A stretch of DNA of 63,298 bases from Octopus bimaculoides. Taxonomy: Eukaryota. This document shows positions 3,980 through 57,723 of this stretch, one piece after another (positions within the stretch are counted from its first letter, which is position 1; each line of letters opens with the position of its first letter). The position numbers were made by a program, and so were the translations under genes. Location of the stretch: the NCBI RefSeq assembly GCF_001194135.2, contig NC_068997.1:26747598-26810895 (forward strand), given 5' to 3'. The notes beneath the pieces were generated by a model. The model was not told the DNA's origin. It worked only from the letters and a program-made list of their open reading frames with translations, and did no database searches.

Positions 3980-4290
3980 TCATCATCATCATCGTTTAAC
4001 GTCCGCTTTCCATGCTAGCATGGGTTGGACGATCTGACTGAGGACTGGTGAAACCGGATGGCAACACCAGGCTCCAATCTAAATCTGGCAGAGTTTCTAC
4101 AGCTGGATGCCTTTCCTAACGCCAACCACTCAGAGAGTGTAGTAGGTGCTTTTACGTGTCACCCGCACGAAGGCCAGTCAGGCGATACTGGCAACGGCCA
4201 CCCTCGAAATGGTGTCTTTTATGTGCCACCCGCACAAGAGCCAGTCCAGGGGCACTGGCAACGATCTTGCTCGAAAATCCTACGAAGGCC
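3977..4290 (-). mobile_element. SINE family A / RTE-tail-type repeat ending in (GAT)n (long copy)
   Basis: Reverse complement of ...CATCCAGCTGTAGAAAC...CATGCTAGCATGGAAAGCGGACGTTAAACGATGATGATG; more than 20 copies in the window. Confidence 0.85.
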
Positions 4291-19455: not shown

Positions 19456-21087
19456 GTGGGTCAGAATGGTCTCTTGAAGACACTATAGAATTAAACAACA
19501 TAAGCATTCCTGATCCAAAGGCAGAAATAGATTTACACTTGATAATGAGTCCTGAAAATATTAGCATTCCAGTGTTTCGCATTGGAGAAGAGAGTTCTAT
19601 CTCCCCGTCCAGTTCTTTAGCCAACATGTCTCGCACTAAATCTGTTCCTAGTCTCTCGACTATCCACAGCGTACGTAAGTCTATTGCTGAGTATGGAAAC
19701 AAAACTGGCATATTGGTACAGAAACATTTAGTACAACTAGACTGGGTCTCTACTGAAGACGGATCCCACATCTTGACTGTCGGTGTTGGCTCAAAGATTC
19801 TCATGTATGCCCAGGTATCTGAAGAAATTGCCCAGATCTCAATGGGCAAACCTGCAAACACCCGCAAACGGCAAACCAATCATGCAAAACGAATTCACAA
19901 ATCTAAAAGCATTGTCGTGGACAACTACGAAGAAGAAATTCGTTGGATGAAACTCCGATGTATTGAACTCACCACAGCAGATTGCTTACCTCCCCTTCCC
20001 ATGCATATGTCCTGGGTTCGATCAGGTATTCTTGTTGTGGCTATGGATAATGAGGTCCATGTCTACTCCCAGTGGCGAGGTTCTGCTGCTTGCTTTGACA
20101 ACCAAAGCTTTGGTAATTATGATGAGCCAGATTGTGACAAACGAAGTTTGTCAGATTTCAGTCTATCTGCCATCCCGAGTTCCTCTATGCTCACTGCTAG
20201 CAAGTCCATGCAGAATTTCAAGTCATCTTTATCCATATCCAGTTTCAAGCAACTTCCAGGTGCACCACTTACCCCTGTCCACCCCAAGAAGAAAGAGCTG
20301 AGTAAGAGAGCTAGTTTGACTAAGAGTGAAAGCACTGCTAGTTTAACTTTAATCACTGATCTTGGTTTATTTGAAGCTGCACGCCAGGCCAACCCTGTAC
20401 TAGCACAGTACCACCCGAAGCAGTTGATTGAACTCTTAAACTTTGGACGCATCAAACGGGTGCGGGCCATCCTCTCACACCTGGTCCGGTGCATTGCTGT
20501 TAGCGAAGTCTATCAAACAACGTATAGTGATGAAATAGACGCTTCAGAAAACAAAATGCATTCTATGCATCGTCAAAGGGCAAAATCAATTGGTGCCAGC
20601 ACTCCAAACGAAGCAGCTGGCATTTGTGAAGAAGCAACACTTGACTACATTGAAATCACCTCGATTCCACCTTTACCAATTTATGCTCTCCTTGCCGCTG
20701 ACAATGATTCTGCTATCGATGCAGACATTGTTGGTGCCGGTACTGGCACCGGCAAACCAGCTTCACAAGACTACACAGATCTCTTTGAAAACAATTTAGA
20801 CGATTCCGATTCTGACACAGATGTCTTTTCTAACACCTCTGATGATGGCATCACATCTAGACAAAGGTCCAACAGCAACAGGGCCCGTTTTATGTCTATG
20901 TCAGCACCAACACCCCATCAGATGCTCAACGTATTTGGCCCAACGCAATGTCAGTCTCTTGGTAAACACCTCACCCACATGCTTCTACCGGGGCTCACGA
21001 ACCTTGACCAAATGTACCTCCTGGCTTTGGCAGACACCATATCAACGACCAGTACAGATACCAGCACTTACAATGCAATGTCATCAG
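19456..21087 (+). CDS. DMXL2: DMXL largest exon (1632 nt, phase 1-1)
   Basis: atttgcag / G-gtatgt; GSEWSLEDTI...LDWVSTEDGSHILTVGVG...QYHPKQLIELL...LPGLTNLDQMYLLALADT. Confidence 0.98.
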
Positions 21088-22082: not shown

Positions 22083-22271
22083 ATCATCATCATCATTATT
22101 TAACGTCCGCTTTCCATGCTAGCATGGGTTGGACGATTTGACTGAGGACTGGTGAAACCGGATGGCAACACCAGGCTCCAATCTAATTTGGCAGAGTTTC
22201 TACAGCTGGATGCCCTTCCTAACGCCAACCACTCAGAGAGTGTAGTGGGTGCTTTTACGTGCCACCCGCAC
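22083..22271 (-). mobile_element. SINE family A copy running into a gap
   Basis: Nearly identical to 3977-4165, so a young subfamily. Confidence 0.85.
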
Positions 22272-23491
22272 NNNNNNNNNNNNNNNNNNNNNNNNNNNNN
22301 NNNNNNNNNNNNNNNNNNNNNNNNNNNNNNNNNNNNNNNNNNNNNNNNNNNNNNNNNNNNNNNNNNNNNNNNNNNNNNNNNNNNNNNNNNNNNNNNNNNN
22401 NNNNNNNNNNNNNNNNNNNNNNNNNNNNNNNNNNNNNNNNNNNNNNNNNNNNNNNNNNNNNNNNNNNNNNNNNNNNNNNNNNNNNNNNNNNNNNNNNNNN
22501 NNNNNNNNNNNNNNNNNNNNNNNNNNNNNNNNNNNNNNNNNNNNNNNNNNNNNNNNNNNNNNNNNNNNNNNNNNNNNNNNNNNNNNNNNNNNNNNNNNNN
22601 NNNNNNNNNNNNNNNNNNNNNNNNNNNNNNNNNNNNNNNNNNNNNNNNNNNNNNNNNNNNNNNNNNNNNNNNNNNNNNNNNNNNNNNNNNNNNNNNNNNN
22701 NNNNNNNNNNNNNNNNNNNNNNNNNNNNNNNNNNNNNNNNNNNNNNNNNNNNNNNNNNNNNNNNNNNNNNNNNNNNNNNNNNNNNNNNNNNNNNNNNNNN
22801 NNNNNNNNNNNNNNNNNNNNNNNNNNNNNNNNNNNNNNNNNNNNNNNNNNNNNNNNNNNNNNNNNNNNNNNNNNNNNNNNNNNNNNNNNNNNNNNNNNNN
22901 NNNNNNNNNNNNNNNNNNNNNNNNNNNNNNNNNNNNNNNNNNNNNNNNNNNNNNNNNNNNNNNNNNNNNNNNNNNNNNNNNNNNNNNNNNNNNNNNNNNN
23001 NNNNNNNNNNNNNNNNNNNNNNNNNNNNNNNNNNNNNNNNNNNNNNNNNNNNNNNNNNNNNNNNNNNNNNNNNNNNNNNNNNNNNNNNNNNNNNNNNNNN
23101 NNNNNNNNNNNNNNNNNNNNNNNNNNNNNNNNNNNNNNNNNNNNNNNNNNNNNNNNNNNNNNNNNNNNNNNNNNNNNNNNNNNNNNNNNNNNNNNNNNNN
23201 NNNNNNNNNNNNNNNNNNNNNNNNNNNNNNNNNNNNNNNNNACTTCAAACTTGTTAAAGAACAGGATTAAAAGCCAAAGCAAGAAAATACAAAAATAAAC
23301 TTATGTAATGACTTTGTCCTTTGGTAACATTCAAATCTAAATTTTATGCCCTTCTTTCCACCAAAGTTGTTAAGCGCCTGGAGATGTCAGATCAGCCCTC
23401 TTCGACTAAATTATTTAAACAAATTGTTAAATAAAATTTGTGTTTGTTTGTTTTCTACCAATTTCAGCAACTGTTTAAACTTATTTTCCAG

Positions 23492-27208: not shown

Positions 27209-28346
27209 GTGTGTCTGGATCGTTTGAAAGATATCCAGCTTGCATTAGTTATTTGCCGCTTATATGACGGTGCTGATGGGCTACCAGAAAGTGCGAAAAA
27301 GATTTTATATACCAAAATACTTGGCTGTAATGAAAATGGTCAAAATTACCTTCCTAGCAAAGCCCACCCTGATCCGTTCCTTCGCAGCATTGTATTATGG
27401 ATGTTGAAAGACCACGAAGGTGCCCTGCAGACCCTTCTCCAAACTGGGGTCGGAGCTGGACATATGCTTGAAGAGCAGGATGACGGAGAGAAATATTTCT
27501 CCAGCCCCAGTGTATTTAACTTCTACAATTATCTCCGAGCCCACCCACTCATCATTCGACAAAATAAAGTTTCCAAAGCTGCCGAAATGCCACTTGTTTC
27601 TCAAAGCACTCACATTGGTATTCGTGACAAGAATGCCACCATTGATGATTGCATCACTCCTGTGGAACGCAGACTGTTTTTCACAACAGCTCATGCGCAT
27701 TTCAAAAACGGTTGCCCACTTCTGGCGCTTGAGGTTCTCTCTAAACTACCTCCACTTGTAGACTATGAAGAAGTTATTGAAATCGAAACTCCAGTTCAGT
27801 ACCAAATTTCCGAAATATTTGACCGCAGGTCATCTTTGAAAACAGCTGTGGCACCAGCAGATCTAAGTCAACCAACACAGTTCCAAGATTCCGCCGAAAG
27901 CTATGATTGGAGTGAACCAGTCCAAACCTTGTCACATCAGCGATCTGTTGACTTCGACTGGGGCATGCCAATCACTTCATTAAACACCGACTTTGATGAG
28001 AAACTTGACCTCATTCTTGATGAGAATTCAGAGAGGTCAGACAATGAATCCGATTGTGCCACAAAAGGCAGCAGCCGCAAAAACTCTGTGCCGGTCAAAG
28101 AAGCTGATGATGATTTGTCTTATGATAAGAAAGTCACTGAAGTCGACATAATGGCACAGCAGTATAAGTTCATTGCCTGCCTGAAGGTGATGATGGAGGA
28201 ATTACGGACGTTAGCAACTGGCTTTGAGGTCGATGGTGGCCAAATGCGCTACCAGTTGTATATTTGGTTGGAGAAGGAGGTGGAATGTCTGCGAGTGTTA
28301 TGCAGCTATGGTGGAGGCAAGTCGAACTCCCAATATTTGATGGATG
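27209..28346 (+). CDS. DMXL2: DMXL exon (1138 nt, phase 0-1)
   Basis: atttcaaag / G-gtaagt; VCLDRLKDIQLALVICRLY...HPDPFLRS...ELRTLATGFEVDGGQMRYQLYIWLEKE. Confidence 0.98.
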
Positions 28347-30455: not shown

Positions 30456-32436
30456 GTATCTCTGTAATACTCGGTTATATCCCTTTTCAGACATATATTG
30501 TTTATACACACACACACACACACTCAGATATATATGTGTTTATATGCATGCATGCATACATATTGTATATTTGTATATATTCCTAAGTATTTTAGAGTGC
30601 AAGTTGGAAATAAAGAAATTATGACGGAAACAAAAATTAACATTTTTATGTCAATATTTTGGCTTAAAAAGCCCTTTTCAAATCAAGATTGGGAGACCCT
30701 CTCATACATACATGCATGGTACTGATGTCATGTAAAATGAACCCACTACACTCTGTAAAAGTGGTTGGCATTAGGAAGGGCATCCAGCTGTAGAAGACAA
30801 GCCAAAGCAGACAATAACAGAATTTAGTGTAGTCCTGTCAAACCATCCAACCCATGCCAGCATGGAAAACAGACATTAAATGATGATGGTGATAGGCTTC
30901 TCTCAGTTTCTATTTGCCAAATTTGCTCACAAAGCTGTAGATGGTCCCTGGACTATAGTAGGACTATAGTAGAGGACACTTGCCCAAGGTGTCATTTCCA
31001 CATAGAAGGGCTGAATCCAAAACTATGTGCTTGAGAAACAAACATAACTATGTAGACACCTGCACCATTCTCAATAATTAATTTATTAAAACACACCATC
31101 AACAACAAAGCTAACTGCCCAATTTAATGCTACCAATCTCTGAATGTCACAACTTATAACTATGCAGAACAGAGCTAAGATCAGTCATTGTTTTATCTTG
31201 ATGTGGGCCTTTTTTGTCAAAATATTGTAAAAAAGAGATAAAAATTATAAATCTTTGTTTGGCCTTTTGTTGTTTTTTTTTACCCTAACTTGCAATGGTG
31301 TGAAGTTGTAATTCACTTTTAACAGCATTCTACAATGCCTGTAATGAACTACAACATATATATATTTGAGTGTGTGTGGGTGTGGGTACACACATACATG
31401 TATGTATGTATATAAATATATCTTTGAGTGTTTTATCCGAAGTGCCTGGATATAGCTTCTCTTTGAACTTGTCACCCAATGGAATATATATATATATATA
31501 TATATACATATATTTATTTATTTATTTATTTGTTTATTTATTTATAAATCCAGTTGTTAATCCAATCACAGCTCATTCATAACATGTACTTCCACTCTAA
31601 CTGTTGCCCTTGATACCTACCTACCTATTGTTTTATTTAAAATGTAGTCCATTTGGCCTATTGTTTTATCCATCCTACTGCTTTTTACTCTTTATATTCA
31701 TAAATCCTATTGCTTAATCAATCCCTTGGACTCAATATTTTACCAGCCATGATACTTGGTAATTTATCAGCAATGGAACTTATGGTTTTATCAGATACAT
31801 TGCTGTGTTATTTATCAAATATCTCTGCTAATGTTTGGATTGTGGTTCTGTCCCAAAATAGCTGTGATTTTCCTTCCAAAGTTAAGTGTTATTTCTTGTC
31901 TAAACACCAGTTGTTATAATCCTCCTTGTAACTTAACCATCATTTCTGTATAAGCCACATCTTATTCTAACATGTCCCAAATCCTGACTCACCACTGATA
32001 AATACCCCCCCCCCCACTTCTATGACCCTGTTTTCTACTTTGTTTTACATTTTCTATTTACTGATTAATTTTACTGGAATTGTAAACATCTTTGTGTTTG
32101 TATTATTGTTGTTATTGTTGTCATTGTTTACCATTTTGGCTTTTAAACCAGCCATATCTGGCCCAAATGTTCTACCTATTTCATGTTCTAATTCGCCAGA
32201 TCTGGCCTCTTACAATATTATTCTAAAACTAAACTTTCCCATTCATTAAAATCTCAAATCTACAAGACAATGCATGATTAATTCAAAACAATATAACTCA
32301 ATAACATTATTTGAAACAGTAACCTGAATACCAAAGGGTTAACTCCAAATCTGCCCTGATCCAGTAGACCATCTTCAATTATTTTTCTCTTTCACAGATA
32401 TAATACCATATATTTTTTGGCATACAAATCAATGCA

Positions 32437-36290: not shown

Positions 36291-37787
36291 GTAGATAGAC
36301 ACTAAACTGTAGTTCTTACAACTGATTTGTTTGAGAATTCTTCACTATCTGTGTAGTATATAATCCAGTACCATCTGGTCATATTTGAGTGGCCAGTGAC
36401 TGAATAGACAAAAGCCTAGTAAAGAGTTGAAGGCCAGTAACATCCATATCCTGCGGCAGAGATGGTTGATAGCAGGATTGCCAAGTCCAGTAAGACATTT
36501 GAATGTTAGTTATTTTGTTACATCAATATTTAATTCTATGCTAAGACATTGAGCTGGCTGAATTGTTAGCTTCATGTACAAAATACTTAATAGCATTTTG
36601 TCTGTCTCTACATTCTGTGTTCAAATTTCACAGAGAGGAACCAGTAGATTACATCGACCCTAGTGCTTAACTGGTACTTACCTCATTGACCTCAAAAGGA
36701 TAAAAGGCAAAGTCGACTGAATTTGAACTGAGGTTGACCTATCATTTCATCCTTTCGGGGTTGATAAAATAAGTACCAGTTGAACTCCGAGGTCAATGTA
36801 ATCGACTTACCCCCGCCTCCAAAATTGCTGGACTTGTGCTTAATTCTGTATTGGATTGATCAAGGCCCAGAATCCTCAAAACTGAGTGAAGTGGAGAAAA
36901 TAGGCAAAAAAAATATTGAGATGCTCCAACAGCAAAAATACTATGGTAAAACGCTCAACTCAATTTCACTAAAATAAGAACAATAATAAAACTGAAGTAA
37001 AGAACAAGTAATATATAGTGCAGGGGGGGAAAAAAACAAAAACGCTGTTCTGTTTATCATTATGTGGCATATTTCAACTTATTTNNNNNNNNNNNNNNNN
37101 NNNNNNNNNNNNNNNNNNNNNNNNNNNNNNNNNNNNNNNNNNNNNNNNNNNNNNNNNNNNNNNNNNNNNNNNNNNNNNNNNNNNNNNNNNNNNNNNNNNN
37201 NNNNNNNNNNNNNNNNNNNNNNNNNNNNNNNNNNNNNNNNNNNNNNNNNNNNNNNNNNNNNNNNNNNNNNNNNNNNNNNNNNNNNNNNNNNNNNNNNNNN
37301 NNNNNNNNNNNNNNNNNNNNNNNNNNNNNNNNNNNNNNNNNNNNNNNNNNNNNNNNNNNNNNNNNNNNNNNNNNNNNNNNNNNNNNNNNNNNNNNNNNNN
37401 NNNNNNNNNNNNNNNNNNNNNNNNNNNNNNNNNNNNNNNNNNNNNNNNNNNNNNNNNNNNNNNNNNNNNNNNNNNNNNNNNNNNNNNNNNNNNNNNNNNN
37501 NNNACACACACACACACACACACACATATTTGACGGGCTTCTTTCAGTTTCCATCTCCCGAATCTACTCACAAGGCTTTGGTCGGCCTGAGGCTGTAGTA
37601 GAAGGCACTTGCCCAAGCTGCCACACAGTGGGATTGAACCCAGAACCATGTAGTTGGGAAGTAAGTTTCTCCCCACACAGCCACACCTGATGTTTTTATT
37701 ATTAATATTTTTTTTTTTTTTTTTTTTTTTCTACGATTAAAATATTTATTGAGTTGCCTTTGAAATCGATGTGATTCTGTCTTGCAG

Positions 37788-40125: not shown

Positions 40126-40294
40126 TACGACTGCTTATGGATACGATGAATCTGACTTCGTTTTGGTTCAGACGCCGTTCGACCAGCTTCCCAATACCGC
40201 TGTATCCACTCCTGGCACACCAATGTCTTATAACTCGGCCAACACTGCAATACCAAACATACAACAATACAACTCAACTAATCGGGCTAATGTT
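40126..40294 (+). CDS. DMXL2: DMXL exon (phase 2-0)
   Basis: attttacag / GTT-gtaagt; TTAYGYDESDFVLVQTP...STNRANV. Confidence 0.88.
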
Positions 40295-41094
40295 GTAAGT
40301 AAAATCACCTTTTCTTTTTTATTTCAATAACATTATCCTAACTCCTATATGATTTTTCTTTGTTGTTTGTTTTTTAAAACTTTTTTTTTTAAATGTTTTA
40401 AATTCTTCTTAAAAAGTATCTGACATCCATATATTCATTATAGGTGTTGTGTCTGAGAATTTTTCATTTTTGTGAGATTAATATATCTTAACCCTTTTAA
40501 TTAATATATTTTAACCCTAAATGCAATAATACATTAACATTGTTTGTTTTTGTAATTAATTTTATAAATAAATCCTTACTGAGCCATTAAATGGAAGTAA
40601 ACATAACAAAAGGTTCCTACATAATACCATAATAGACTGTTTTTATTTCAATATGGACATTCTCAAATAAGTTTTTTGATAGATTTAGATGGGGCATCTG
40701 GTGGATTAGCATCATAGAACCTGAGGTGGTCTAGGTTGGGTGGGCATTGTAGAACCCGGGGTAGTCTCCAGTTGACTGATATCAAAAGTATTAATATAAC
40801 TGAATCTCCCCTCTCTATGCTAACCCCTCAACTATAAATATAAAATATTAATAATGTGTGTGTGTGTGTGTGTGTGCATGCATTTTTATTGCAAGTTGGC
40901 AGAATCATTAGAGCTTTGGACAAAATGTTTCACAGTGATTGTTCAGTCTCTTTATGTTCTGAATTCAAATCCCACTGAGGTCTGCCTTTACCTTTCATCC
41001 TTTCAAGTTCAACACTATTAACTAAGACTCTCTCCTGAAATTTATGAGCCTTGTGCCTGAATGAGAAACTTTGTTGTTTATTATAATTATTTTA

Positions 41095-41225
41095 TGGAAC
41101 TTGTGAAAGAGGAAGACATGGGACAAATTAGTGAAGGATGCTCTCGGGACTTTGAATCTTATGTAGGAGATGACAAAGAACCTGGACTCCTGGCAATATG
41201 CAGTACTTGAGAAGACATGTCCATC
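41095..41225 (+). mobile_element. Decayed 3' end of an RTE-like LINE ORF2
   Basis: ..KTWDKLVKDALGTLNLM*EMTKNLDSWQYAVLEKT resembles RTE C-terminal motifs. Confidence 0.55.
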
Positions 41226-42336
41226 TTGGTGAAACAGAGGTTCTGGGAGCATAATATGAATATACACAGCTGGGCCCCTCATCCACCTCCAACTGTAGTC
41301 TTCTGCCACTGTAATTAAATGAGGCAGAACGGTATATTTTAACATCTTTTCTGTGATACCATTTATCTTTCTCACTACCCAGAACCACTTCACTTAACAT
41401 CCATCCTACATCCTTGACATTGTCCCTCTTCACTCACATTTTACATTGACACCAACAAATTATCCCTCCCTCTTCATTGAATCACCTCCTGTCAACTTGT
41501 TTCTGTCACTGTATATCTCTCGCTTTTACCACACACTCTATCTCTCCAATCACACTCTTACAGCTTACCCATCAACGCATCTTCTCCCTTTCTCTCATCC
41601 TTCCCCTGTTTACTGTATCACCACTCTTCTGCTCTTCACCCAATCAGCACCTATTTTCCATTCCGTGACCTTCCCTGTAACTCCTGTGTATCATTGATCA
41701 TCCCCTTTGCTATTCATCTCTTGTTCATCTCTCTTCCCTAGTCCATATCTAATCATTATCTACTTTCCCTAACCTTCCATCTGAGTCATATTTATCATCC
41801 TCTCCCTCAACCCTTGTTCATCATTCAGTAAATTCACACCTTTACCCTATCTATAGCCAATCTTCACATTCTTCATAATCTCTTGCAGCCTCTACCCATC
41901 CTCCTTCTTCTGTCTCCAGAGCCAACCCTGACAGTTTGTTCCCAGCTTGTTCTTTTCTATCTTTCAAGCTCCACCTTTAATACTCTCGCCCATTCTTATA
42001 TGATACAAGGTAGCAGTATATTTCCTCAACAACATGAAACCTTTTCTGGCTCCTTCTCTCATACGTTAACCCCTTATCCCACAACATAGAGCTGCTTCCC
42101 TCTCTACTAAAGCTCCACTTCAGTTGAAGAGGAACTTAGTCTTGCGAGCTACTTGGTGACCGCACTAGTACTGGTGTCATGGAAAATGCATCCCGTGTGC
42201 ATTGTACAGTGGTTGATATTAAGAACAGCATCCAGCCTTAGAACTCATTCCACAGCAGATTTTAGAGTACAATGTAGTTTCATGACCAGTTGACCTGTGA
42301 AACTATGCAATTCATGCCAACATGAAAGCTGAGATG

Positions 42337-42374
<38 letters not shown>

Positions 42375-42606
42375 CCTAACTGGCCTTCGTGCCGGTGACA
42401 CATAAAAGCACCCACTACACTCTCGGAGTGGTTGGTGTTNNNNNNNNNNNNNNNNNNNNNNNNNNNNNNNNNNNNNNNNNNNNNNNNNNNNCTGCCAAAT
42501 CAGATTGGAGCCTGGTTTGGCCATCTGGTTCGCCAGTCCTCAGTCAAATCGTCCAACCCATGCTAGCATGGAAAGCGGACATTAAACAATGATGATGATA
42601 TATGTA

Positions 42607-42650
<44 letters not shown>

Positions 42651-42950
42651 TAAATTTCCAAATTAGGTTGGTAGAGATATACAATCCTAGCAGGTTAATA
42701 ATGCTAGCTAACCTCTGTGAGTGTAGAAAAACTCCAGTTAGTTTATTTTACTATCCTCAGTAGATCTTCACAGCAGTAACTCCACATGTCTCTATAGAGA
42801 CTGCATGTTGTCAGCAGAGAAGGAATAGTAAATCAATGATAATGTGAGCAGAGATTTATATATCCAGTTTTATGGATGCAGGTGCAGAAATGGAAAGACA
42901 TGATTGACTGCAAAATAAAACTAGATATATAAATCTGTTCTCCTTATTAT

Positions 42951-42989
<39 letters not shown>

Positions 42990-43324
42990 TATACATGTAT
43001 ACTTAAGTCTAGTACTTATTCTATTGGTGTCTTATGCCAAATCACGTAAGTCACAAGAACATAAGCCAGTGCAGGTTGTCAAACTGTGGTAGGGGACAAA
43101 CACAAAGACACACTTATATGTATGTGTGTGTGTATGTACACATTAGGCTTCTTTTAGTTTCTGTCTACCAAATCCACCCACAAGGCTTAGATTGGCCCTA
43201 GACTATAATGGAAGACACTTGCTCAAGGTGCCATGCAGTGGGCCTTAAACTGGAACCATGTGGTTGGGAGGAAAACTTCTTACCATACAGCCACTCATGC
43301 ACATGAACACACACACACACACAT

Positions 43325-43543
43325 ATAGTAATAATTGGTGAAGGAAACAAAAGATAGGTTTAATACTAGTCTTTATTAGTACAATGATCGTTTCAACTCA
43401 TCCTGCAACTGTCCATTATCAGTAGGATTCTGCACAAAATCCTACCCATAAGGGACAGTTGCAGGATGAGTCAAAATGACCATTGTACTGATGAAAGACT
43501 AGTGCCAAATCTATCTTCTATTTCTTTCATCAATTATTACTAT
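43325..43543. repeat. 219-bp fold-back inverted repeat (MITE or inverted Penelope end)
   Basis: Arms of about 105 bp, roughly 85% identical by eye, 8-nt loop at 43430-43437, TA at both outer ends. Confidence 0.85.
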
Positions 43544-43678
43544 TTAAACTAATACTACAGAATTCCTGAAGTAGATCCAGCAGAAATATGCACCAACCAT
43601 GGATGTCACCAGGTAGCCCAAACCGTGAAGTGAAGGTGCTTTACTCAACACACTAACTGACCCATTAATTAAAAAAAT

Positions 43679-43724
<46 letters not shown>

Positions 43725-44086
43725 CAAGAGTGTTAGAGGTTGTGAATCCAACCAACCAAGGGATAATATCTATCCAATACACTGCTGGTAGAATACCCAA
43801 TTATTGATATTGTATACTAGCCACAACTCTTTATACTGTGGTCCCAACAGTATATATTGTAACTACAATACAATATCCTCAACCTACAAAGTCGAGATTG
43901 TAATCCTTGTATTTCTTTTTCTATCCTCTCTCCCTCCTTCTCCTTCACCCACCCTAATTGTACACCATCTGTGAAATATTGATTTATATGACAAGAATTA
44001 ACTATTGATTTCTATGATGATGATTATCTACATGCACCTGTTTACTCAGAATAGCAAATAGGTCACAAGGTGTTGGATTACAAAGT

Positions 44087-44126
<40 letters not shown>

Positions 44127-44185
44127 ACACATTCTCTGACTGATGTGTGCATAACATTGTAGTGTATGTATGTGTGTGTGCATGT

Positions 44186-44343
44186 GTTTGATCCGGCTCC
44201 AGGCGACTTGAAGTTTTACAGGCTTCTAACAGAAATTCAGCTCATTTAGATTACTGAATCTGATTTTGGTAATCTGAGCCTAAACAAGCTAGGCTTCTCT
44301 TAGAAGCCTGCAAAACTTTAAATCTCATGGAGCCAGATCAAAC
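44186..44343. repeat. 158-bp fold-back inverted repeat
   Basis: GTTTGATCCGGCTCCA...GGCTTCTAA paired with TTAGAAGCC...TGGAGCCAGATCAAAC. Confidence 0.8.
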
Positions 44344-44350
44344 TGTTTTA

Positions 44351-44389
<39 letters not shown>

Positions 44390-45164
44390 TCCTACTAAAT
44401 GTGTTGAGTGCTTTTTTTATTTCTTCTATCCACTCATTCATATATGTATATGTGTGTGCATACATACATACATACATACATATAGAGGGAGAGAGTTGGC
44501 CAGAAGTCACCTGACAGTAAATCAAAACCATTTAATTCCAAGATTAAAACAAAAGATTCTTTTATATGAGACTTCGCTAATAAATAGACAAATGTTGAAA
44601 AAAAAAACAGTGATTTTAATTCACAGTATTCAATTATTAAACATTCATAATTGGAATGAATAAATAAAGTTGAATATTAAGTACTTAGGAAATTTTGATT
44701 AATGTCAGGTGATTTTTAGCCAACACTGTGTGTGTGTGTGTGTGTGTGTGTNNNNNNNNNNNNNNNNNNNNNNNNNNNNNNNNNNNNNNNNNNNNNNNNN
44801 NNNNNNNNNNNNNNNNNNNNNNNNNNNNNNNNNNNNNNNNNNNNNNNNNNNNNNNNNNNNNNNNNNNNNNNNNNNNNNNNNNNNNNNNNNNNNNNNNNNN
44901 NNNNNNNNNNNNNNNNNNNNNNNNNNNNNNNNNNNNNNNNNNNNNNNNNNNNNNNNNNNNNNNNNNNNNNNNNNNNNNNNNNNNNNNNNNNNNNNNNNNN
45001 NNNNNNNNNNNNNNNNNNNNNNNNNNNNNNNNGTGTCAGTAGAGAAAGGGACCGATGCACAATAGGTTGAAATGGTCAAACTGATTAAAAAAAATTATCT
45101 CTTGAATTCTGTTTTCTTGCTTGGAACATTGAAAATCGAACAGATGGGCTAAAACACATTCGGA

Positions 45165-45383
45165 TGTTTTGTCATGTTTCTTCCTGCTCTTCTGATTCTG
45201 CATTCAAATACTGCTGAGGTCAACTCTACCTTGCATCTTTTCAAGACTGATAACATAAGTACCAGTCAAATACTGGATTTGACTGGTACTTATGTTATCA
45301 GTCTTGAAAAGATGCAAGGTAGAGTTGACCTCAGCAGTATTTGAATGCAGAATCAGAAGAGCAGGAAGACACATGACAAAACA
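45165..45383. repeat. Near-perfect palindrome (107-bp arms, 5-nt loop) derived from a SINE family B copy
   Basis: 45165-45271 is the reverse complement of 45277-45383 with one mismatch (45178/45370); loop ACTGG. Confidence 0.95.
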
Positions 45384-45906
45384 AGATGTCTGATATGCTA
45401 ACAATTCTGCTAGCTCAATAATGAATGGCATCAAATTGTGGTACAAGTCCAGTAATTTCAAAGGAAGATGGGAGTTAGCCTATTACATCGACATCAGTGA
45501 TTTTATTTCTGGGGTTGATAAAATCAACTATCCCTGCTCACCCAAAATTTCAGGCCTTGTGCCTATATTAGAAAGAATTATTATCATTATAATGTAAGAA
45601 TGCATGGCCCAGTGCTTAGGGTTTTGCACTCACAATTGTGAGAATGTGGTTTCAGTTCCTAGACTAGGTGGTGTGTTGTGTTCTTGAGGAAAAACACTTC
45701 ACCTCACATTGTTCTACGATCACTCTGACACCAGGTACATGGTACACAATGCACCTGTTCAGCAACATTGATTTGATAGAGGAAGTGAGCTACTCTACAG
45801 TACATACATTTGATCATTATAAAAGAATCCTTTGCTGTACAGGTTGTTCAGCAAAAAGCTGAACATTCATACATTGTCTTTGACAGGAAAGTCCATCATT
45901 ATTATA

Positions 45907-45943
<37 letters not shown>

Positions 45944-47104
45944 GACTGGAGCCTGGTGTTGCCATCCGGTTTCACCAGTCCTCAGTCAAATCGTCCAACC
46001 CATGCTAGCATGGAAAGCGGACGTTAAACGATGATGATGATGATGATGATGATAAGGTGGCAAGCTGACATGATCAACTTCTGCCAAGGTCGACTTTGCC
46101 TTTCATCCTTTTGGGGTCGATTAAATAAGTACCAGTTACGCACTGGGGTTGATATAATCGACTTAATCCGTTTGTCCCTCCTTGTTTGTCCCCTCTGTGT
46201 GTAGCCCCTTGTGGGTAGTAAAGAAATAAGAATCATTAGCATGTCAGGTTAGTGGCATTTCTTCTGTCTTTACAGTCTGAGTTCAAATTCCACTAAAGTC
46301 AACTTTCCCTTTCATCCTTTAGAGGTCAATGAAATAAGTACCAGTTACATATTGGGATTGATATAATCAACTAACCCCCACCCCAAAATTTCAGACCTTG
46401 TGCTTTTAGAAAAAAATATTTTTATTTTTTTAAAGGCAGCAAGCTGGCAGAATCATTAGCATACCGGACAAAATGCTTAGCAGCATTTTGTCCAACTTTA
46501 CATTCTGAGTTCCATGAAGTTGACTTTGCTTTTATCATCCTTTCGGGATCAATAATATAAGTATCAGCTGGGATCAGTGTAATCGACTAAACCCGTCCAC
46601 CCCAAATTTCAGGTCTTGTACCTTCAGTGGGAAGAATTATTCATCCAATTTCTTTTAAGTAGTTAATAACAAATCCTTTATTTATTTTATTATTTCAGAA
46701 AATCCCTTCCAGCTGTCACTCTTTCAATAGTCAGTCATTACTCTGTTTAGTTACACCCACAACTTGTCTTGTAAACATACTGCCAGTGTATGAGAGAGAG
46801 AGACACGTATATAATTTTGATTGCCATATCTTTACATTATACAGACAGAGATAGTGGGGGAGAGATATAGTTATTGATAGGCAGAAAGATAAAACTACGC
46901 ACTTTTAACTTATAATTTTGTTCATAGCTAGGCATATGTTTATCTATTGACTTCAGCACCTTAACTGGTCATTTGATCTCTTTCTCACTTTGATCCTGAC
47001 ATAAAGCTATTTCTTATCATTTGTATTGATTATTTAAAATGTCTACTACTTTTTTTGTTACTATTATTTTTTTCCCCTGAATTCATATCATCTGTTGCCG
47101 TACT

Positions 47105-47314
47105 GCCTGACTGGCCTTCATGCAGGTGGCACGTAAAAGCACCCACTACACTCTTGGAGTGGTTGGCGTCAGGAAGGACATCCAGCTGTAGAAACTCTGC
47201 TAAATCAGATTGGAGCCTGGTGTAGCCATCTGGTTCACCAGTCCTCAGTCAAATCGTCCAACCCACGCTAGCATGAAAAGCGGACGTTAAACGATGATGA
47301 TGATGATGATGATG
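47105..47314 (+). mobile_element. SINE family A copy
   Basis: GCACGTAAAAGCACCCACTACAC...GCGGACGTTAAACGATGATG; similar + copies at 42375-42600, 45945-46052, 49070-49235 and 61835-62010. Confidence 0.85.
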
Positions 47315-47500
47315 TAATAACTACCTTGTTAGTGGTTAAAACAAAATCAAAAAGTGACAGTAAAGCACTTGACAAATCTTTGCTTTCTTTTCTATAGTGT
47401 TTTTCTCAGGGACAACAGTGCTGTGGGGTGTCTTTTCCATCTACCAACAACCTTGCTAAGTTATGCTCTGATAGGGTCATATATATAAATATGTGTGTGT

Positions 47501-47548
<48 letters not shown>

Positions 47549-47751
47549 ATGAAACTCAAGTCACAAGACAAACTCTCAACTTAAAAAAAAAACTGTCCTC
47601 TGCAACTTGTATTGAGCACACCTTTCTCATTTGTTCCGCATTAATAATGTACATATATATTATATCATGCTAGCATGGAGGGCGGACGTTAAATGATGAT
47701 GATGATGATATATATATATATATATATATACACCTTTTTCNNNNNNNNNNG

Positions 47752-47783
<32 letters not shown>

Positions 47784-48492
47784 CTTTTTCACTTTTTACC
47801 TGTTTCAGTCATTAGACTTATTTTTTTAAGCCTGGTATTTATTCAATTGGCCTCTTTTGCCAAATCACTTAGTTACAGGGATGCAAACACACCAAAACCT
47901 GTTGTCAAGCAGCGTGGGGTGGGGAGGACAAACACGCACATGCATATATATATGACAGGCTTCTTTCAGTTTCCATCTGCCAAATCCACTCACAAGGCCT
48001 TGGTCGGTCTGAGGCTGTAATAGAAGGCACTCAAGTCAAGTGTGACTGAATCCAGAACCATGTGGTTGGAAAGCATGCTTCTTACCACACAGCTACGCGT
48101 GTGTGTAGATGTGTGTGTGTGTGTGTATGTATATAGTTTCCAGTTCTTTTAATTACATTGAAGCCCTAACTCTTGTCGGAAGAATTTAGAAATATTTATC
48201 CACACAACGGAACTAACCAGGAAATAGTTTTCTGTAATATTTCCCCTCTATGCTCATTTCACAGTACACTCTGCCACTATGATAACATTTTACTGGGATG
48301 GGATTCTTAGATTTAAATAACTTCCATTTGGTTTTAAGAGGTTTTTTCTTTTTTTTTTTTTTCAAGGTTTTAGTCAGTCTCTATAATGTCTAAGGAAATA
48401 CATTACCCATATGTTTCATTCAATTGATTTTGATAGTAATTTAAATTGGAGTGGATTTTGGAAAATAACTAGCTTTTGCATTCGTTGGTCTG

Positions 48493-48840
48493 TTAAGATG
48501 GTGCTTGGAACAAAAGCGAAATATATATTAGTATATTAAGATGTTTGTATTAGGAATATAGCAAAATGTAAATTGGTAAACAAAAATAGTATTTGATACA
48601 TAAAAATGACAACTGTATATTGGTATACTATGATGGTGTTTGGTACATAAAAATGAGAAGTATATATTAGTATGTTAAGATAGTGCTTGTTATATAACAA
48701 AATATAAGTATATATATTGGGATATCAATATGGTGTTTGAAACATAACAAAAAACAAATGTATATTTGTATATTAAGACGTTTGGAATGAAACAAAAGAT
48801 AAATATACATTGATGTCTTAAGATGGTGTTTGAATACAAA
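48493..48840. repeat. Degenerate tandem repeat, about 45-bp unit
   Basis: Recurring TTAAGATGGTGTTTG..ACATAA.AAAA..TATATATT.GTATA. Confidence 0.65.
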
Positions 48841-49721
48841 TCTCAAATATATACATTTGAGGACAAACTCTTGTTAAATCATTTGAAATTTAAGGAGGGT
48901 GTGTGTGTGTTTCTCAAAAAAATTTGTCTCTGTTTTCATAATCCTTCTCTTTCACCTAACCACAAAGTATATTTCCAAGACTTGAATGGTTTAATTATAA
49001 TTCTCAAGTTTTAATTAACATTACCTATGTATTTGATACATATATGATACAAAAACCACATGAAAGTACAAATCCACTCTGTGGGGTGGTTTGTGTTAGG
49101 AAGGACATCCAACTGCAAAAAAAAAAAAAATGCCAAGACAGTAACAGTAGCCTAGTGTAGTCTTCTCCTTGGCCGGCTCCTGTCAAACTGTCCAACCCAT
49201 ACCAGCATGAAAAGTGGCTGTTAAACGATGATGATGGAACATTGCTACGGCCATCACAACAATAATAATCCTTTCATTTATTTTCCACAAGAGCCCACAC
49301 GTTCTTACAAAACGTGTGTATGTGTTACAGAGAGGATATGTGGAGGGGATGTACACACACATATATATATATATATATATATGTATAAAAATGGAAAAAC
49401 TTGATTAAAAAAAGAAAAGAAAGAACTACTCAAACAGTAAAGAAGGTGCTGTTTTTGTTACAAGTTTTCCACACCCTTAAAAAAAAGTCCCCTTCCTTCA
49501 AAAATAACCCCTCCATCAAAACCTTTATTTAACTAAAACCACCTTTATTGAATGTTCTATATTTGACCTGTTCATCATGACCTGATCTGGTTGTCTTTTC
49601 TCTCTTTTTTTTTTCTCTTCTCCCCCCTCTCTTTCTTTCTACCTTTCTTTCTTTCTTTCTTTGCTGCCGTTGCCACTGCTTGGCTGGATAAAAAAAAAAA
49701 AATTGGTAAATTTCTCTACAG

Positions 49722-49805
49722 ATCAAAGGAATTAATCTGTCAGGGCTTGGAACCCCCCAGTTCTGTCAGTTTGTCCGCGATAGAAGTAGACGCTTGCTAC
49801 AGTCG
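49722..49805 (+). CDS. DMXL2: Candidate alternative cassette exon of DMXL (84 nt, phase 0-0)
   Basis: tttctctacag / TCG-gtaaga, long upstream pyrimidine tract; IKGINLSGLGTPQFCQFVRDRSRRLLQS with no stop. Confidence 0.7.
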
Positions 49806-50644
49806 GTAAGAGCACAGCCTAACCACCTCCACCACCACCTCCTCCTCCACCATTGTCCCCCCTCACTCCCACCTTTCCGTTTATTCATTTGCTTGGTACT
49901 GTTGTAGTCGTTGTTCATGCTCACCCTGGTGTTGTCATCATCATTGTTGTTGTTGTTGCTGCTACTACTGCTGCTGCTGCTGCCGCTCTTATGAATGTTG
50001 TTTTTTAATCATATTATTTTTACCGTTTTCTTATTTAGATGCTTGCAGTTTTAACTTGTATATGCATGTGTTTGGATAAATGGATGTATAAGCGTGTGTG
50101 TATGTAATATGCACATATGTATGAATGCATGTCTGCATGTCTACACACCTGTGCACATACACATCTATATACACACGTATATATGGAAATGTATACATAT
50201 GTTCATTTAAATTTTATCTGGTGTATACATATGTGTGTGCGTTTATGTGTGTATATATGTGTGTGTCTGCATAAGCACTTGCACAGAAAGCTGTGTGTGT
50301 TTGTACAGAAAGGTTATGACATCTGTTAAGATGCATGTGTGTATGTTAGAATGCAAGTTATAATTTCGGCATCATATATATATATATATATTTGCATATG
50401 TGTGTATGTGTACATTTGCATATGTAAGTATATATACATGTAGATACATAAATATGTATATATACATGCATATATATATATACAATTGCTGATGTGTGTG
50501 TGTGTGAATATGCATGCATGTATATATGTGTGTATATATATGACAGATTCAAACATGGAGTAACATGGGTGCAGTATTTAGCCCATGTTGAGACTAGATT
50601 TATCTTCTCTTTGGTTATTTTTTGTTTTTCTTTTATCACAACCG

Positions 50645-55110: not shown

Positions 55111-56249
55111 TTAAGTCTTCAGCATTTAAACTAACCATATTCAACCCAAATATTCTACCAGTTTTATGTTCAGACTGGCCAGCTCCAGCCTCTCACACCT
55201 ACCCTACATTGTCATTCTAAAAATAAACAGTTACATCATTGAAATCTAAAAGCTACAAGATAATGCATGATTAAAATTAATGTGAATAAATGGACATTAC
55301 ATTTGACAAATCTGAATATTTAAGGGTTAACATTTGAAGACAAGGAAAACAACTAGACTGTGAAGAATAGTTGCTGTGACACTTGAAATATCTGTCAAAA
55401 TAAGTCCTGTGGGAGTCACTTGTATAGTTAACCAGATAATACAGTGAGATATCATACTATCAATATGAACTACTGTTTACTTCTTGCTTCACACTGTTGC
55501 TTGATGAGGCCAGGATCATCCCATGTTAATAGTCCCAGAGTTGTCATCAGAAGAGCTACACCTGAGATTTTTTTGTCATGGTCTCCAAAATTGTTGTGGT
55601 ATTTCAGTAACAATTCATGGTTTAGAGTTTAGAGTTTCTTTTCTGAATGATTTCTTTATAGTTTCACCAATATTTTTGTTGTTTTTGTTTGGTCATTCCA
55701 AATAGTTTTTGTTGTTTTCTTTTAACTTTGCATCTCATTTCTGTCATCACATTTGTCAGTTGTTCATCTAAAACCAAAGTAGTTTTGGTAGTCTTAGTTT
55801 TTCTGACAGACATTCTCTTAGTTTTATCTTCTTAGCTTTTTCTTTGTTATTTTATTTTTTCTCACAATTAAAAAAAATCCATGAATTTCATTTCCATTTC
55901 AATTTACAGTAGAATAATTAAATGTCATGGTCATATGCCATTTTTTCTCTCTTTTCTAATTTCTAGACATTTTAAAATTCTTTTTTAAAAAAAAAAAAAA
56001 AAAAAAAANNNNNNNNNNTATGAGTGCTCTTTTATATATTTTTTTTTCAATCTCAATAATTTTCATTGTTCTTTTTTTTTTTTTTTATAAATTGCTCTAT
56101 TTTACAATATATTTCATCTGTAATAGTATGCTAATTAGAAACCCATGTTGTATTTGCATGTTGATAATTCAGTGAAAGTGATTTTAATGAAATGTTTCCT
56201 TTTTCTTCTCACTCTCTTTCTCACTCTCTCACTCTCTCTGACTCATCAG

Positions 56250-56310
56250 ATAATTCAGAGAAATGTCACTGGTGTCAGAAGAATTGGAGCTCACCCCCAT
56301 CTACCTCACT
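56250..56310 (+). CDS. DMXL2: DMXL exon (phase 0-1), start of C-terminal WD40 block
   Basis: actcatcag / T-gtaagt; IIQRNVTGVRRIGAHPHLPH. Confidence 0.93.
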
Positions 56311-57592
56311 GTAAGTCAATCATTTCTGATTTTTGTTACTGTTTACTATTTGTAGCTCACAAATATATGCACACACACACACACACACACACATACACAC
56401 TCTAGTAATATGATAATCAAATTGGGTAGTATTTCATGTTCAGATCGATCCAATGATAACAGGTGTACAATTAACTTCTATTCCTTTTGTCCTTGTTAAA
56501 ATTCAAATTCTAGTGGCATTGTCTACACTACACTGCATTAGACATACCAAGTAATACAAAGCCAGCAACACACACCAACATGACTTCATCCAGAAGATAA
56601 GGCTATGTTAGTCTAGGAACATTGTCTTGACCTTGTGGTGGTTGTAAATGGTTATCACCATCATATAAGTGAGGTTGCTCATTTCCAATCTTCCATGAAA
56701 AACATGGCTGGCCATGAGAAATATTATTGTGCCTGGAAACAAGTGAGGGTTGGCAGTAGGAAGGACATCCTGCTGTAGAAAATCTGAATCAACGCATTCC
56801 ATTGAAGCCATGTAAGCAATGGGAAAGTAGACTTTAAAACAATGGTGATAGTGACAGATATAAATAGCAACTGTTTACTTTAAAGTTTGACTACTAAAAT
56901 TGGTTTTAGAAAACAAAGGATGCTTTGAGAAGTTAGTTTTTAAGTAGCCTTGTTTCTGCTTGACAAGTTGGTTTGACCCTGAACTTTTTTTTTGTGTCTT
57001 GTAAAAGTTGGCAATCAATCTACTCTTCATACTTTGTATTTCTGTATTCGTAGTGAGATAAGGAAAGCAATGCATAGAGGTGCAGTGGTATTGTATTATC
57101 AAAAATGAATGAATGTCATCATCATACAAGTGTTGTCCTTTGTTTCCAGTCTTCCTTGAAAACATGTCAGGCCATGGAGAGATATTACTTTTCATGGAAA
57201 CAGATGAGGCAAGAAGGGCATTTAGCTGTAGAAGATCTGGCTTCATGAATTCCTTCCAATCCATGTGAGCATTGAAAAAGTGGATGTTAAAACGAATATG
57301 TTGATATTTTATATATATATATATATATTTCACTTAGATATTGTGAAACAAATGGCCTTGTGTAGAACTGAACTCAACTACGAGTCCACTGTATTTGATA
57401 ACAGAAACAGTTGTGAGCTACTGAAGTTCATAAGATAATCTCTTATTCCTTTGTCATCTCATTTTCTTATGTGTGTACACACACACACACTCACACACAA
57501 TGAAATATGTGGCTTTTGAAATGCTTGTTGTAAACACAAGATTATTGTATTGTCTATTATTTATTGTTGTTTCACTGAACATGTTCATACAG

Positions 57593-57723
57593 ATCTGACC
57601 GGGAGCACTGATGGCAGTGTCCGCATGTGGGAGTGGGGCCATCACCAGCCATTGTCTCTGCTACGACAGCCTGGCTGTTTCTCAAAGGTCACCCGTACCC
57701 TGTTCAATGCCCAAGGTAATAAG
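57593..57723 (+). CDS. DMXL2: DMXL exon (phase 1-0)
   Basis: ttcatacag / AAG-gtaaga; YLTGSTDGSVRMWEW...FNAQGNK. Confidence 0.96.

What the first reader, a model, noticed from the sequence alone, without database searches (positions are those of the whole stretch)
49722..49805. Strong 84-nt cassette exon isolated in the middle of the 16-kb intron
It has a canonical acceptor and TCG/gtaaga donor, is phase 0-0, and encodes a protein-like peptide, IKGINLSGLGTPQFCQFVRDRSRRLLQS. It is CpG-containing in an AT-rich setting. A pyrimidine tract of about 65 nt (49596-49662) and several UGC words lie upstream, an arrangement typical of regulated exons. Vertebrate DMXL as I recall it joins the flanking exons directly. 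I have an unverified memory of a similar FCQFV-DRSR-LL segment in some arthropod isoforms, which would make it an ancient protostome alternative exon.
Basis: partly seen in the sequence, partly recalled or inferred. Interest (0 to 1): 0.75.

Follow-up and report, generated by a model that had tools for sequence, protein, structure and literature searches.

The report
Ancient 84-nt alternative exon of DMXL
The 84-base segment is a real, in-frame exon of the DMXL (rabconnectin-3 alpha) gene, which helps assemble the cell's V-ATPase proton pump; the same exon occurs at the same place in snails, bivalves, insects and ticks, where it is either included or skipped, so it is an old optional protein segment of unknown function.

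Summary
Window 49722-49805 is an open 84-nt interval, cag|ATC...TCG|gtaaga, phase 0-0, encoding IKGINLSGLGTPQFCQFVRDRSRRLLQS. It lies in the 15,955-nt intron between DMXL exons 40126-40294 and 56250-56310.

It is not a chance ORF. A profile built only from 12 non-cephalopod sequences hits this ORF alone in the six-frame window (E=2.1e-9; next best E=0.21).

The homologous 28-aa segment sits at the same junction in gastropods, insects and a tick; a bivalve model has 26 aa there. Two arthropod genomic contigs carry it as a discrete 84-nt exon.

Three Bradybaena similaris isoforms differ only at this junction: skipped, a 7-aa microexon, or microexon plus cassette. Hymenopteran and caenogastropod sequences also show both forms. 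All sampled vertebrate DMXL1/DMXL2 and amphioxus sequences lack it.

AlphaFold2 of the Lottia orthologue predicts an amphipathic helix that leads into the first strand of the C-terminal WD40 propeller.

Skipping in this species is untested, because no RNA data were available. I found no paper describing the exon. Interest is moderate.

The parts
40126..40294 (+). Upstream DMXL exon (169 nt). It encodes ...TTAYGYDESDFVLVQTPFDQL...NSTNRANV and ends in phase 0. It contains an LIR-like motif, DESDFVLV, at 40145-40168.
   Evidence: It aligns with the '...(E/D)FLV(V/I)...QTGRGxxV' exon of all DMXL orthologues. The equivalent human DMXL1 FLVI motif is reported as a candidate LIR (PMC12246789).
49591..49662 (+). 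72-nt pyrimidine (CU-rich, CTTT-type) tract, 60-130 nt upstream of the cassette acceptor.
   Evidence: the longest Y-tract on the + strand, and one of two of 50 nt or more in the window. A regulatory role is inferred, not tested.
49662..49679 (+). Cluster of four UGC words (TGCTGCCGTTGCCACTGC).
   Evidence: read directly. One search counted three from 49663 on. Function untested.
49690..49721 (+). A13 run (49690-49702) followed by the proximal acceptor region ttggtaaatttctctacAG.
   Evidence: Pyrimidine content at -22..-4 is 0.53, against 0.74 and 0.79 for the two flanking exons.
49722..49805 (+). The 84-nt exon, phase 0-0, IKGINLSGLGTPQFCQFVRDRSRRLLQS. It is the orthologue of the protostome DMXL 28-aa cassette.
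   Evidence: collinear tblastn; HMM E=2.1e-9; 16/28 identity to Timema and to L002.
49806..49811 (+). Donor site GTAAGA.
   Evidence: Donor consensus score 6/9.
56250..56310 (+). Downstream 61-nt exon, IIQRNVTGVRRIGAHPHLPH + first base of Y. It starts in phase 0 and carries the first strands of the C-terminal WD40 propeller.
   Evidence: tblastn 70% to Bradybaena. Conserved in every DMXL examined.
57593..57723 (+). Next exon (131 nt), (Y)LTGSTDGSVRMWEWGHHQPLSLLRQPGCFSKVTRTLFNAQGNK.
   Evidence: The intron position before 'LTG' is conserved in many animals.

Best explanation
The window carries most of a mollusc (cephalopod-like) DMXL / rabconnectin-3 alpha gene on the + strand. 49722-49805 is a genuine exon of that gene. 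It is the orthologue of an 84-nt, phase 0-0 exon present since at least the protostome ancestor, and it is used as an optional (cassette) exon.

Included, it inserts 28 residues into the disordered linker between a conserved LIR-type motif (DESDFVLV, in the upstream exon) and the C-terminal WD40 propeller (WD40_3).

Shown: the exon's reality, its orthology, its conserved length and phase, and both isoform types in other protostomes.

[quoted passage not shown] Inclusion would then order and extend the N-terminal edge of WD40_3.

[quoted passage not shown] The most likely role is therefore isoform-specific tuning of where, or with what partner, the mRAVE/rabconnectin-3 complex docks. This would set V-ATPase assembly differently in different cell types.

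The long upstream pyrimidine tract with UGC words and the weak proximal acceptor are the likely handles for regulated inclusion. This is inferred only.
For: Gene identity. Rav1p_C hits lie in exons 19455-21032 (55 bits) and 27209-28312 (29 bits; cutoff 27), and WD40 hits in the spliced C-terminus. The window matches Bradybaena DMXL residues 120-3301 collinearly.

Exon reality. The unique HMM hit has E=2.1e-9. CpG o/e is 0.80 against 0.28 for the intron.

Orthology. The segment occupies the same junction in five other molluscs and in at least six arthropod lineages. Two arthropod genomic contigs hold a discrete 84-nt exon, cag|...|gt, between the same neighbouring exons (L002 2756-2839, L003 424-507).

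Conservation. Identity to insects is higher in the cassette (16/28) than in the adjacent constitutive exon (9/21).

Alternative use. Bradybaena isoforms BFY98259-61 are identical apart from a 7-aa microexon and the 28-aa cassette. In Hymenoptera, P0184, P0300 and P0302 include it, while P0174, P0320, P0321, P0309 and P0310 skip it. Batillaria includes it and the 92%-identical Logan transcript P0165 skips it.

Structure. AlphaFold2 of Lottia P0163 gives a helix at 169-182 inside the cassette (158-185), with pLDDT 60-82. It runs into strand 184-189, and the upstream linker is below 40. In the skip form P0165 the propeller is intact (pLDDT above 90) and everything N-terminal of the VRRIGS strand is disordered. 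The hydrophobic moment of PQFCQFVRDRSRRLLQ is in the top 1.3% of shuffles, with net charge +3.

Context. [quoted passage not shown]
Against: No transcript data for the window's species could be reached, so skipping here is extrapolated from other protostomes.

The Bradybaena isoforms are database gene models, and their supporting evidence is unknown to me.

The codon-usage score of the exon is only weakly positive: 0.16 per codon in frame against 0.35-0.45 for neighbouring exons, and another frame scores higher.

In a second cephalopod-like contig (L001) no cassette was found in the 8 kb upstream of the 61-nt exon; the sequence held stops there.

Helix confidence is moderate. The tool gives no coordinates, so docking onto the propeller is not verified.

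The pyrimidine tract is a CTTT-type simple repeat in a repeat-rich genome.
Confidence: 0.8

Rival explanations
1. The exon is real and orthologous, but in cephalopods it is constitutive. It would always be included and would be simply part of the protein here.
For: No skip transcript is known for this species. Gene models of Lottia, Batillaria, Candidula and Tegillarca show only the inclusion form. The donor is a good GTAAG.
Against: Skipping is documented or annotated in other gastropods (Bradybaena P0152/P0153, Logan P0165, MetaClust P0001 ending ...GRGSSVIL) and widely in arthropods. The exon is symmetrical (84 nt, 0-0), so skipping is frame-neutral. It has a weak proximal acceptor behind an A13 run.
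Confidence: 0.17
2. It is a chance open frame or decaying pseudo-exon that merely resembles an exon.
For: The codon-usage score is weak. The region is rich in simple repeats and SINE-like copies.
Against: The profile built without cephalopod sequences finds it uniquely (E=2.1e-9). It is in the right order and phase between the right exons. It is 57% identical to insect cassettes. CpGs are retained.
Confidence: 0.02
3. The segment is a passive spacer. Its inclusion only lengthens the disordered linker before WD40_3, with no folded or binding role.
For: The N-terminal half of the cassette and the whole upstream linker are predicted disordered. The propeller folds equally well without it. Vertebrates do without it.
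Against: Length is fixed at 28 aa (29 in Hymenoptera; 26 in the Tegillarca model). The motif FCQFV.DRSR.LL.P is conserved between cephalopod and insects more strongly than the neighbouring constitutive exon. A helix is predicted, with a significant amphipathic moment.
Confidence: 0.1

Closest known systems
Bradybaena similaris DMXL isoforms BFY98259.1 / BFY98260.1 / BFY98261.1 (P0154, P0152, P0153)
   Same: Same gene and same junction. The 28-aa optional segment VKSLSSLGVNNPMYSYCIVDRSRRLIKP lies between ...GRGSSV and ILRRPVMGVRRIGSHP..., and the isoforms differ only there.
   Different: Only 9/28 residues are identical to the window. This snail also has a 7-aa microexon (PKSHSKT) upstream of the cassette, which I could not find in the window.
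Arthropod DMXL cassette (Timema podura CAG2058163.1, Timema genevievae CAD7603680.1, Ephemera danica, Leptidea sinapis XP_050676166.1, Amblyomma americanum; genomic contigs L002 and L003)
   Same: 84 nt, phase 0-0, with the same flanking exons. The consensus is [MVI]KGLxFPG...P.FCQFV.DRS[RK].LL[KR]P. Identity to the window is 14-16/28 for Timema, Ephemera, P0180 and L002, but 11/28 for Amblyomma and 9/28 for Leptidea.
   Different: The introns around it are 0.1-0.8 kb, against 9.4 and 6.4 kb here. No comparable long pyrimidine tract lies in the 150 nt upstream in L002 or L003.
Vertebrate DMXL1 and DMXL2 (rabconnectin-3 alpha), subunits of mRAVE
   Same: Same family and same exon pair...QTGRGAAV | MIKRNINNVRRMTSHPTLPYY | LTGAQDGSV.... 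The LIR-type FLV(I/V) motif upstream and the WD40_3 propeller downstream are also shared.
   Different: No cassette is present in any sampled vertebrate or amphioxus sequence. Vertebrates instead have two paralogues.
Yeast Rav1 (RAVE complex)
   Same: It shares the Rav1p_C region and the N-terminal propellers (PMC12246789).
   Different: Rav1 lacks the C-terminal WD40_3 domain, so it has no equivalent of this junction.

Membership tests
DMXL / rabconnectin-3 alpha (Rav1 family) | Rav1p_C (PF12234) region above Pfam's gathering score | tested here: met
   55.4 bits (exon 19455-21032) and 29.0 bits (exon 27209-28312), cutoff 27.
DMXL / rabconnectin-3 alpha (Rav1 family) | Collinear match to a full-length DMXL, including the metazoan-specific C-terminal WD40 propeller | tested here: met
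   34 ordered tblastn segments cover Bradybaena residues 120-3301. The propeller was modelled with pLDDT above 90 in orthologues.
Protostome DMXL 28-aa cassette exon | Position between the '...GRGxxV' exon and the 61-nt 'xxK/RxxVxxxRR..SHP..P.Y' exon | tested here: met
Protostome DMXL 28-aa cassette exon | A discrete exon of 84 nt in phase 0-0 | tested here: met
   Window. Arthropod contigs L002 and L003 are also 84 nt. Protein-level length is 28 aa in 10 of 12 orthologues.
Protostome DMXL 28-aa cassette exon | Sequence match to the family profile | tested here: met
   34.4 bits, E=2.1e-9. It is the only significant hit in the six-frame window, and the profile contains no cephalopod sequence.
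Alternatively spliced cassette exon | Both inclusion and skipping transcripts in the same species | not testable with these tools
   No RNA data for the window's species. A junction 17-mer scan of metagenome contigs gave only chance hits. The feature is met in an orthologue at annotation level (Bradybaena) and in closely related Hymenoptera.
Alternatively spliced cassette exon | Skipping preserves the reading frame | tested here: met
   84 nt. The upstream exon ends, and the downstream exon starts, on codon boundaries.
PTB- or Rbfox-type regulated exon | Binding motifs placed near the exon and bound by the factor | tested here: inconclusive
   Motifs are present: the 72-nt CU tract and four UGC words upstream, and four UGCAUG at 50063-50332 against 0.66 per kb in the window. 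All lie in simple-repeat sequence, there is no cross-species intron alignment, and binding cannot be tested here.

The most novel reading that the evidence does not exclude
Protostomes have a single DMXL gene. They may use this more than 500-My-old cassette as a switch that places a basic amphipathic helix and an extra strand on the membrane-proximal WD40_3 propeller, just downstream of the ATG8-binding-type LIR motif. This would yield two functionally distinct mRAVE complexes, for example synaptic-vesicle versus lysosomal, or constitutive versus signal-recruited V-ATPase assembly. Vertebrates would have lost the exon and achieved the same split through the DMXL1/DMXL2 duplication.
Probability: 0.15. 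Interest if true: 0.7.

Novelty: new member of a known kind. Interest (0 to 1): 0.45.

Why it matters
DMXL is the core subunit of the metazoan RAVE/rabconnectin-3 complex, which reassembles V-ATPase on lysosomes and synaptic vesicles. Human DMXL2 variants are associated with neurological disease (DEE81), and DMXL2 appears in hearing-loss and hypogonadism gene studies.

Recent structural and functional work (PMC12527914, PMC12246789) points to the linker plus C-terminal propeller as the part needed for membrane recruitment.

This optional 28-residue segment is inserted exactly there. It has been kept at fixed length and phase in molluscs and arthropods, and between cephalopod and insects it is better conserved than the neighbouring constitutive exon. 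That makes it a natural handle for asking how recruitment or partner choice of the complex is tuned.

For genome annotation, it shows that a small exon isolated in a 16-kb intron is genuine. It also gives a profile for finding the exon in other protostomes.

Tried and rejected
(1) A spliced query around the junction against the 5.8-billion protein index found only one 102-aa fragment, P0001. The word index is insensitive here.

(2) Searches of PDB sequences found no DMXL structure, only generic WD40 proteins.

The single exon 57592-57723 was used instead, and that opened the case.

(4) I first assumed 57593 was the next exon. The join was out of frame with or without the cassette, which led to the 61-nt exon 56250-56310.

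(5) Simple codon-usage scoring was uninformative.

(6) I looked in the window for the gastropod 7-aa microexon (PKSHSKT-like). There was no convincing candidate. The intron has assembly gaps at 42440-42491, 44752-45032 and 47741-47750 upstream of the cassette, and at 56009-56018 downstream of it.

(7) A second cephalopod-like contig, L001, was fetched to test conservation of the flanking intron. Only exons align (76-80%), and the cassette is not within the 8 kb held.

(8) A cassette-focused profile search for deuterostome copies produced only 95 candidates. It returned three arthropod genomic ORFs with the cassette, plus skip-type exons of vertebrates. This is no evidence for a deuterostome cassette, and sensitivity was poor.

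(9) A junction 17-mer scan of metagenome contigs gave 24 chance matches.

(10) Literature searches for DMXL2 or Rbcn-3A alternative exons or microexons found nothing about this exon.

Full report
OBSERVATION

Window 49722-49805 reads cag|ATCAAAGGA...CTACAGTCG|gtaaga. It translates without a stop to IKGINLSGLGTPQFCQFVRDRSRRLLQS.

The gene on the + strand is a DMXL / rabconnectin-3 alpha gene. Exons 19455-21032 and 27209-28312 hit Pfam Rav1p_C above threshold, and the spliced C-terminus hits WD40 models. A full-length snail DMXL (Bradybaena P0154) maps collinearly to the window from residue 120 to 3301.

The exon upstream of the finding is 40126-40294. It ends ...AAT GTT|gtaagt on a codon boundary.

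I first took 57593 as the next exon and found the join out of frame, with or without the candidate. Orthologue sequences then pointed to a 61-nt exon at 56250-56310, cag|ATA ATT ... CAC T|gtaagt. It starts on a codon boundary and supplies the one extra base needed by exon 57593-57723.

The other details also hold:
- The exon has four CpGs (o/e 0.80, against 0.28 in the intron and 0.55 in this gene's other exons).
- The pyrimidine tract runs 49591-49662 (72 nt). It is the longest on this strand and one of only two of 50 nt or more in 63 kb.
- Four UGC words lie at 49662-49679.
- An A13 run follows, then a rather weak proximal acceptor tract.

IS IT MORE THAN CHANCE?

A codon-usage score was uninformative. 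Homology is decisive.

The single-exon query 57592-57723 against 1.84 billion representatives returned many DMXL fragments. Two of them, Batillaria KAK7475121.1 (P0031) and Candidula CAG5135030.1 (P0018), carry a 28-residue segment exactly where the candidate lies, between ...GRGxxV and the 'xxRRxVxGVRRIGSHP..P.Y|LTG' exon.

A wider search with an alignment and extraction of the junction from every hit showed the segment in these taxa:
- Molluscs: Lottia, Batillaria, Candidula, Bradybaena, and Tegillarca (26 aa in that model).
- Insects: Timema podura and T. genevievae, Ephemera danica, Leptidea sinapis.
- Hymenopteran sequences: P0184, P0300 and P0302.
- A tick: Amblyomma americanum.
- Unnamed transcripts: P0180 and P0245.

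The consensus is [MVI]KG[LI]xFPG...P.FCQF[VI].[DE]RS[RK].L[LI].P.

I built a profile from 12 of these sequences, none cephalopod, and searched all six-frame ORFs of the window. It hit only ORF 49710-49904, at residues 6-31, which is the exon itself (34.4 bits, E=2.1e-9; next best E=0.21).

Two arthropod genomic contigs carry the segment as a discrete 84-nt exon with cag|...|gt boundaries between the same neighbours (L002 2756-2839, L003 424-507).

The window's peptide is 16/28 identical to Timema and to L002, but only 8-9/28 to gastropods. The adjacent constitutive exon shows the expected opposite pattern: 13-15/21 to gastropods and 6-10/21 to arthropods. The cephalopod has thus kept a near-ancestral cassette while gastropods diverged. 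Between cephalopod and insects, the optional exon is better conserved than its constitutive neighbour.

IS IT ALTERNATIVE?

Three Bradybaena similaris entries (BFY98261, 3323 aa; BFY98260, 3330 aa; BFY98259, 3358 aa) are identical except at this junction. One joins directly, one has a 7-aa microexon PKSHSKT, and one has the microexon plus the 28-aa cassette (checked by string identity).

Other pairs of forms:
- A MetaClust fragment ends ...GRGSSVIL, which is the skip junction.
- A Logan transcript 92% identical to Batillaria skips the exon, while the Batillaria model includes it.
- In Hymenoptera, P0184, P0300 and P0302 include it. P0174, P0320, P0321, Dufourea and Melipona skip it. Identity between the two groups is 95.6%.
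- Among ticks, Amblyomma includes it and Rhipicephalus skips it.

All sampled vertebrate DMXL1 and DMXL2 sequences and amphioxus isoform X1 join the flanking exons directly. Vertebrate genomic ORFs show the same 21-aa exon. A cassette-focused search found no deuterostome copy, but only 95 candidates were scored.

For the window's own species I could reach no RNA data, and a junction k-mer scan gave only chance matches. Skipping here is therefore extrapolated.

WHAT IT PROBABLY DOES

The insert lies in the linker between a conserved acidic F-x-x-V motif (DESDFVLV, 40145-40168) and the C-terminal propeller.

In human DMXL1 the equivalent FLVI (2695-2698) is a candidate LIR. Deleting it, or the C-terminal WD40_3 domain, abolishes lysosomal recruitment after TRPML1 activation. 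[quoted passage not shown] DMXL1/2, WDR7 and ROGDI form the metazoan RAVE complex that assembles V1 onto Vo (PMC12527914).

AlphaFold2 of the Lottia C-terminus, with a 62-sequence alignment, gives these results:
- The upstream linker is disordered (pLDDT below 40).
- Inside the cassette (residues 158-185) there is a helix at 169-182 with pLDDT 60-82.
- The helix runs into a strand at 184-189 ahead of the VRRIGS strand.

In the skip-form mollusc transcript P0165, the propeller is equally confident (above 90), but everything N-terminal of VRRIGS is disordered.

The helix segment of the window, PQFCQFVRDRSRRLLQ, is strongly amphipathic (top 1.3% of shuffles) and has net charge +3.

My best reading is that inclusion adds an ordered, basic amphipathic helix plus a strand to the edge of the membrane-proximal propeller. 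This would alter recruitment or partner binding of the complex in a cell-type-specific way. This step is inference. The tool gives no coordinates, and no experiment exists.

REGULATION

Three features fit a regulated exon: the very long CU tract with UGC words placed distally, an A-run that interrupts it, and a weak proximal acceptor. Four UGCAUG motifs lie 260-530 nt downstream (50063-50332; window mean 0.66 per kb).

All of these sit in simple-repeat sequence, and I could not test conservation. The other cephalopod-like contig, L001, aligns only in exons and does not reach the cassette. The two arthropod contigs show no comparable tract.

COMPARISON AND NOVELTY

The exon already appears in public gene models of other species. 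I found no paper that mentions it.

It is a new, well-supported member of a familiar kind: a deeply conserved, symmetrical cassette exon. It sits at an interesting place in a protein whose architecture was described only in 2025.

VERDICT

- The exon is real and orthologous: about 0.97.
- It is alternatively spliced in this species: about 0.8.
- The mechanism is tentative.
- Interest is moderate, 0.45.

Noticed in passing
Orthologues P0152/P0154 (Bradybaena), P0164 (Logan), P0166 (JGI); window intron 40295-49721: A second, very small optional insert occurs at the same junction, just upstream of the cassette. It is PKSHSKT (7 aa) in Bradybaena, LKRQLKHQ (8 aa) in a Logan mollusc-like transcript, and YVKSKKK (7 aa) in a JGI transcript. 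No convincing counterpart was found in the window, whose intron has assembly gaps at 42440-42491, 44752-45032 and 47741-47750.
   Followed up: partly
window 40145-40168: DESDFVLV in the upstream exon matches the conserved acidic F-L/V-V-I/V motif of all DMXLs. It corresponds to the candidate LIR (FLVI 2695-2698) reported for human DMXL1, about 45 residues before the cassette insertion point.
   Followed up: partly
window 50063-50332: Four UGCAUG (Rbfox-type) motifs lie within 270 nt, 260-530 nt downstream of the cassette donor, against 0.66 per kb over the window. They sit in TG/CA-type low-complexity sequence, so this may be a repeat artefact.
   Followed up: partly
window 49075-49236, with copies at 47149-47302, 22088-22242, 30761-30891, 42509-42597, 45985-46039, 3984-4038 and 522-571: A dispersed SINE-like repeat (68-86% identical copies on both strands) has one copy about 490 nt upstream of the cassette. 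Its translations give the recurring '...HHHH..T..FHA.MGWT' ORFs seen all over the window.
   Followed up: partly
window 49823-49990: Directly after the donor there is a (CCA/CCT)n block followed by (GTT)n(GCT)n microsatellites. They create long spurious ORFs on both strands.
   Followed up: no
cassette alignments: The cephalopod cassette is closer to insect cassettes (14-16/28) than to gastropod ones (8-9/28), the reverse of the neighbouring exon. This suggests accelerated divergence of the cassette in gastropods.
   Followed up: partly
L001:14042-16071: The orthologous intron of the other cephalopod-like contig (ENA ERZ21867824) contains retrotransposon ORFs (rve, SH3_retrovirus, weak RVT_2).
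   Followed up: no
P0018 (Candidula unifasciata CAG5135030.1), residues 1-78: The N-terminal part of this partial gene model reads like translated intron (pyrimidine-tract-type FFLLFYVLYLFSF...CWEQ) up to the cassette. This is probably an annotation artefact.
   Followed up: no
window 5453-6032, 7174-7417, 22272-23241, 37085-37503, 42440-42491, 44752-45032, 47741-47750, 56009-56018: There are eight runs of N (assembly gaps, 2,566 nt in all). A few DMXL residues with no tblastn match may lie in them.
   Followed up: no
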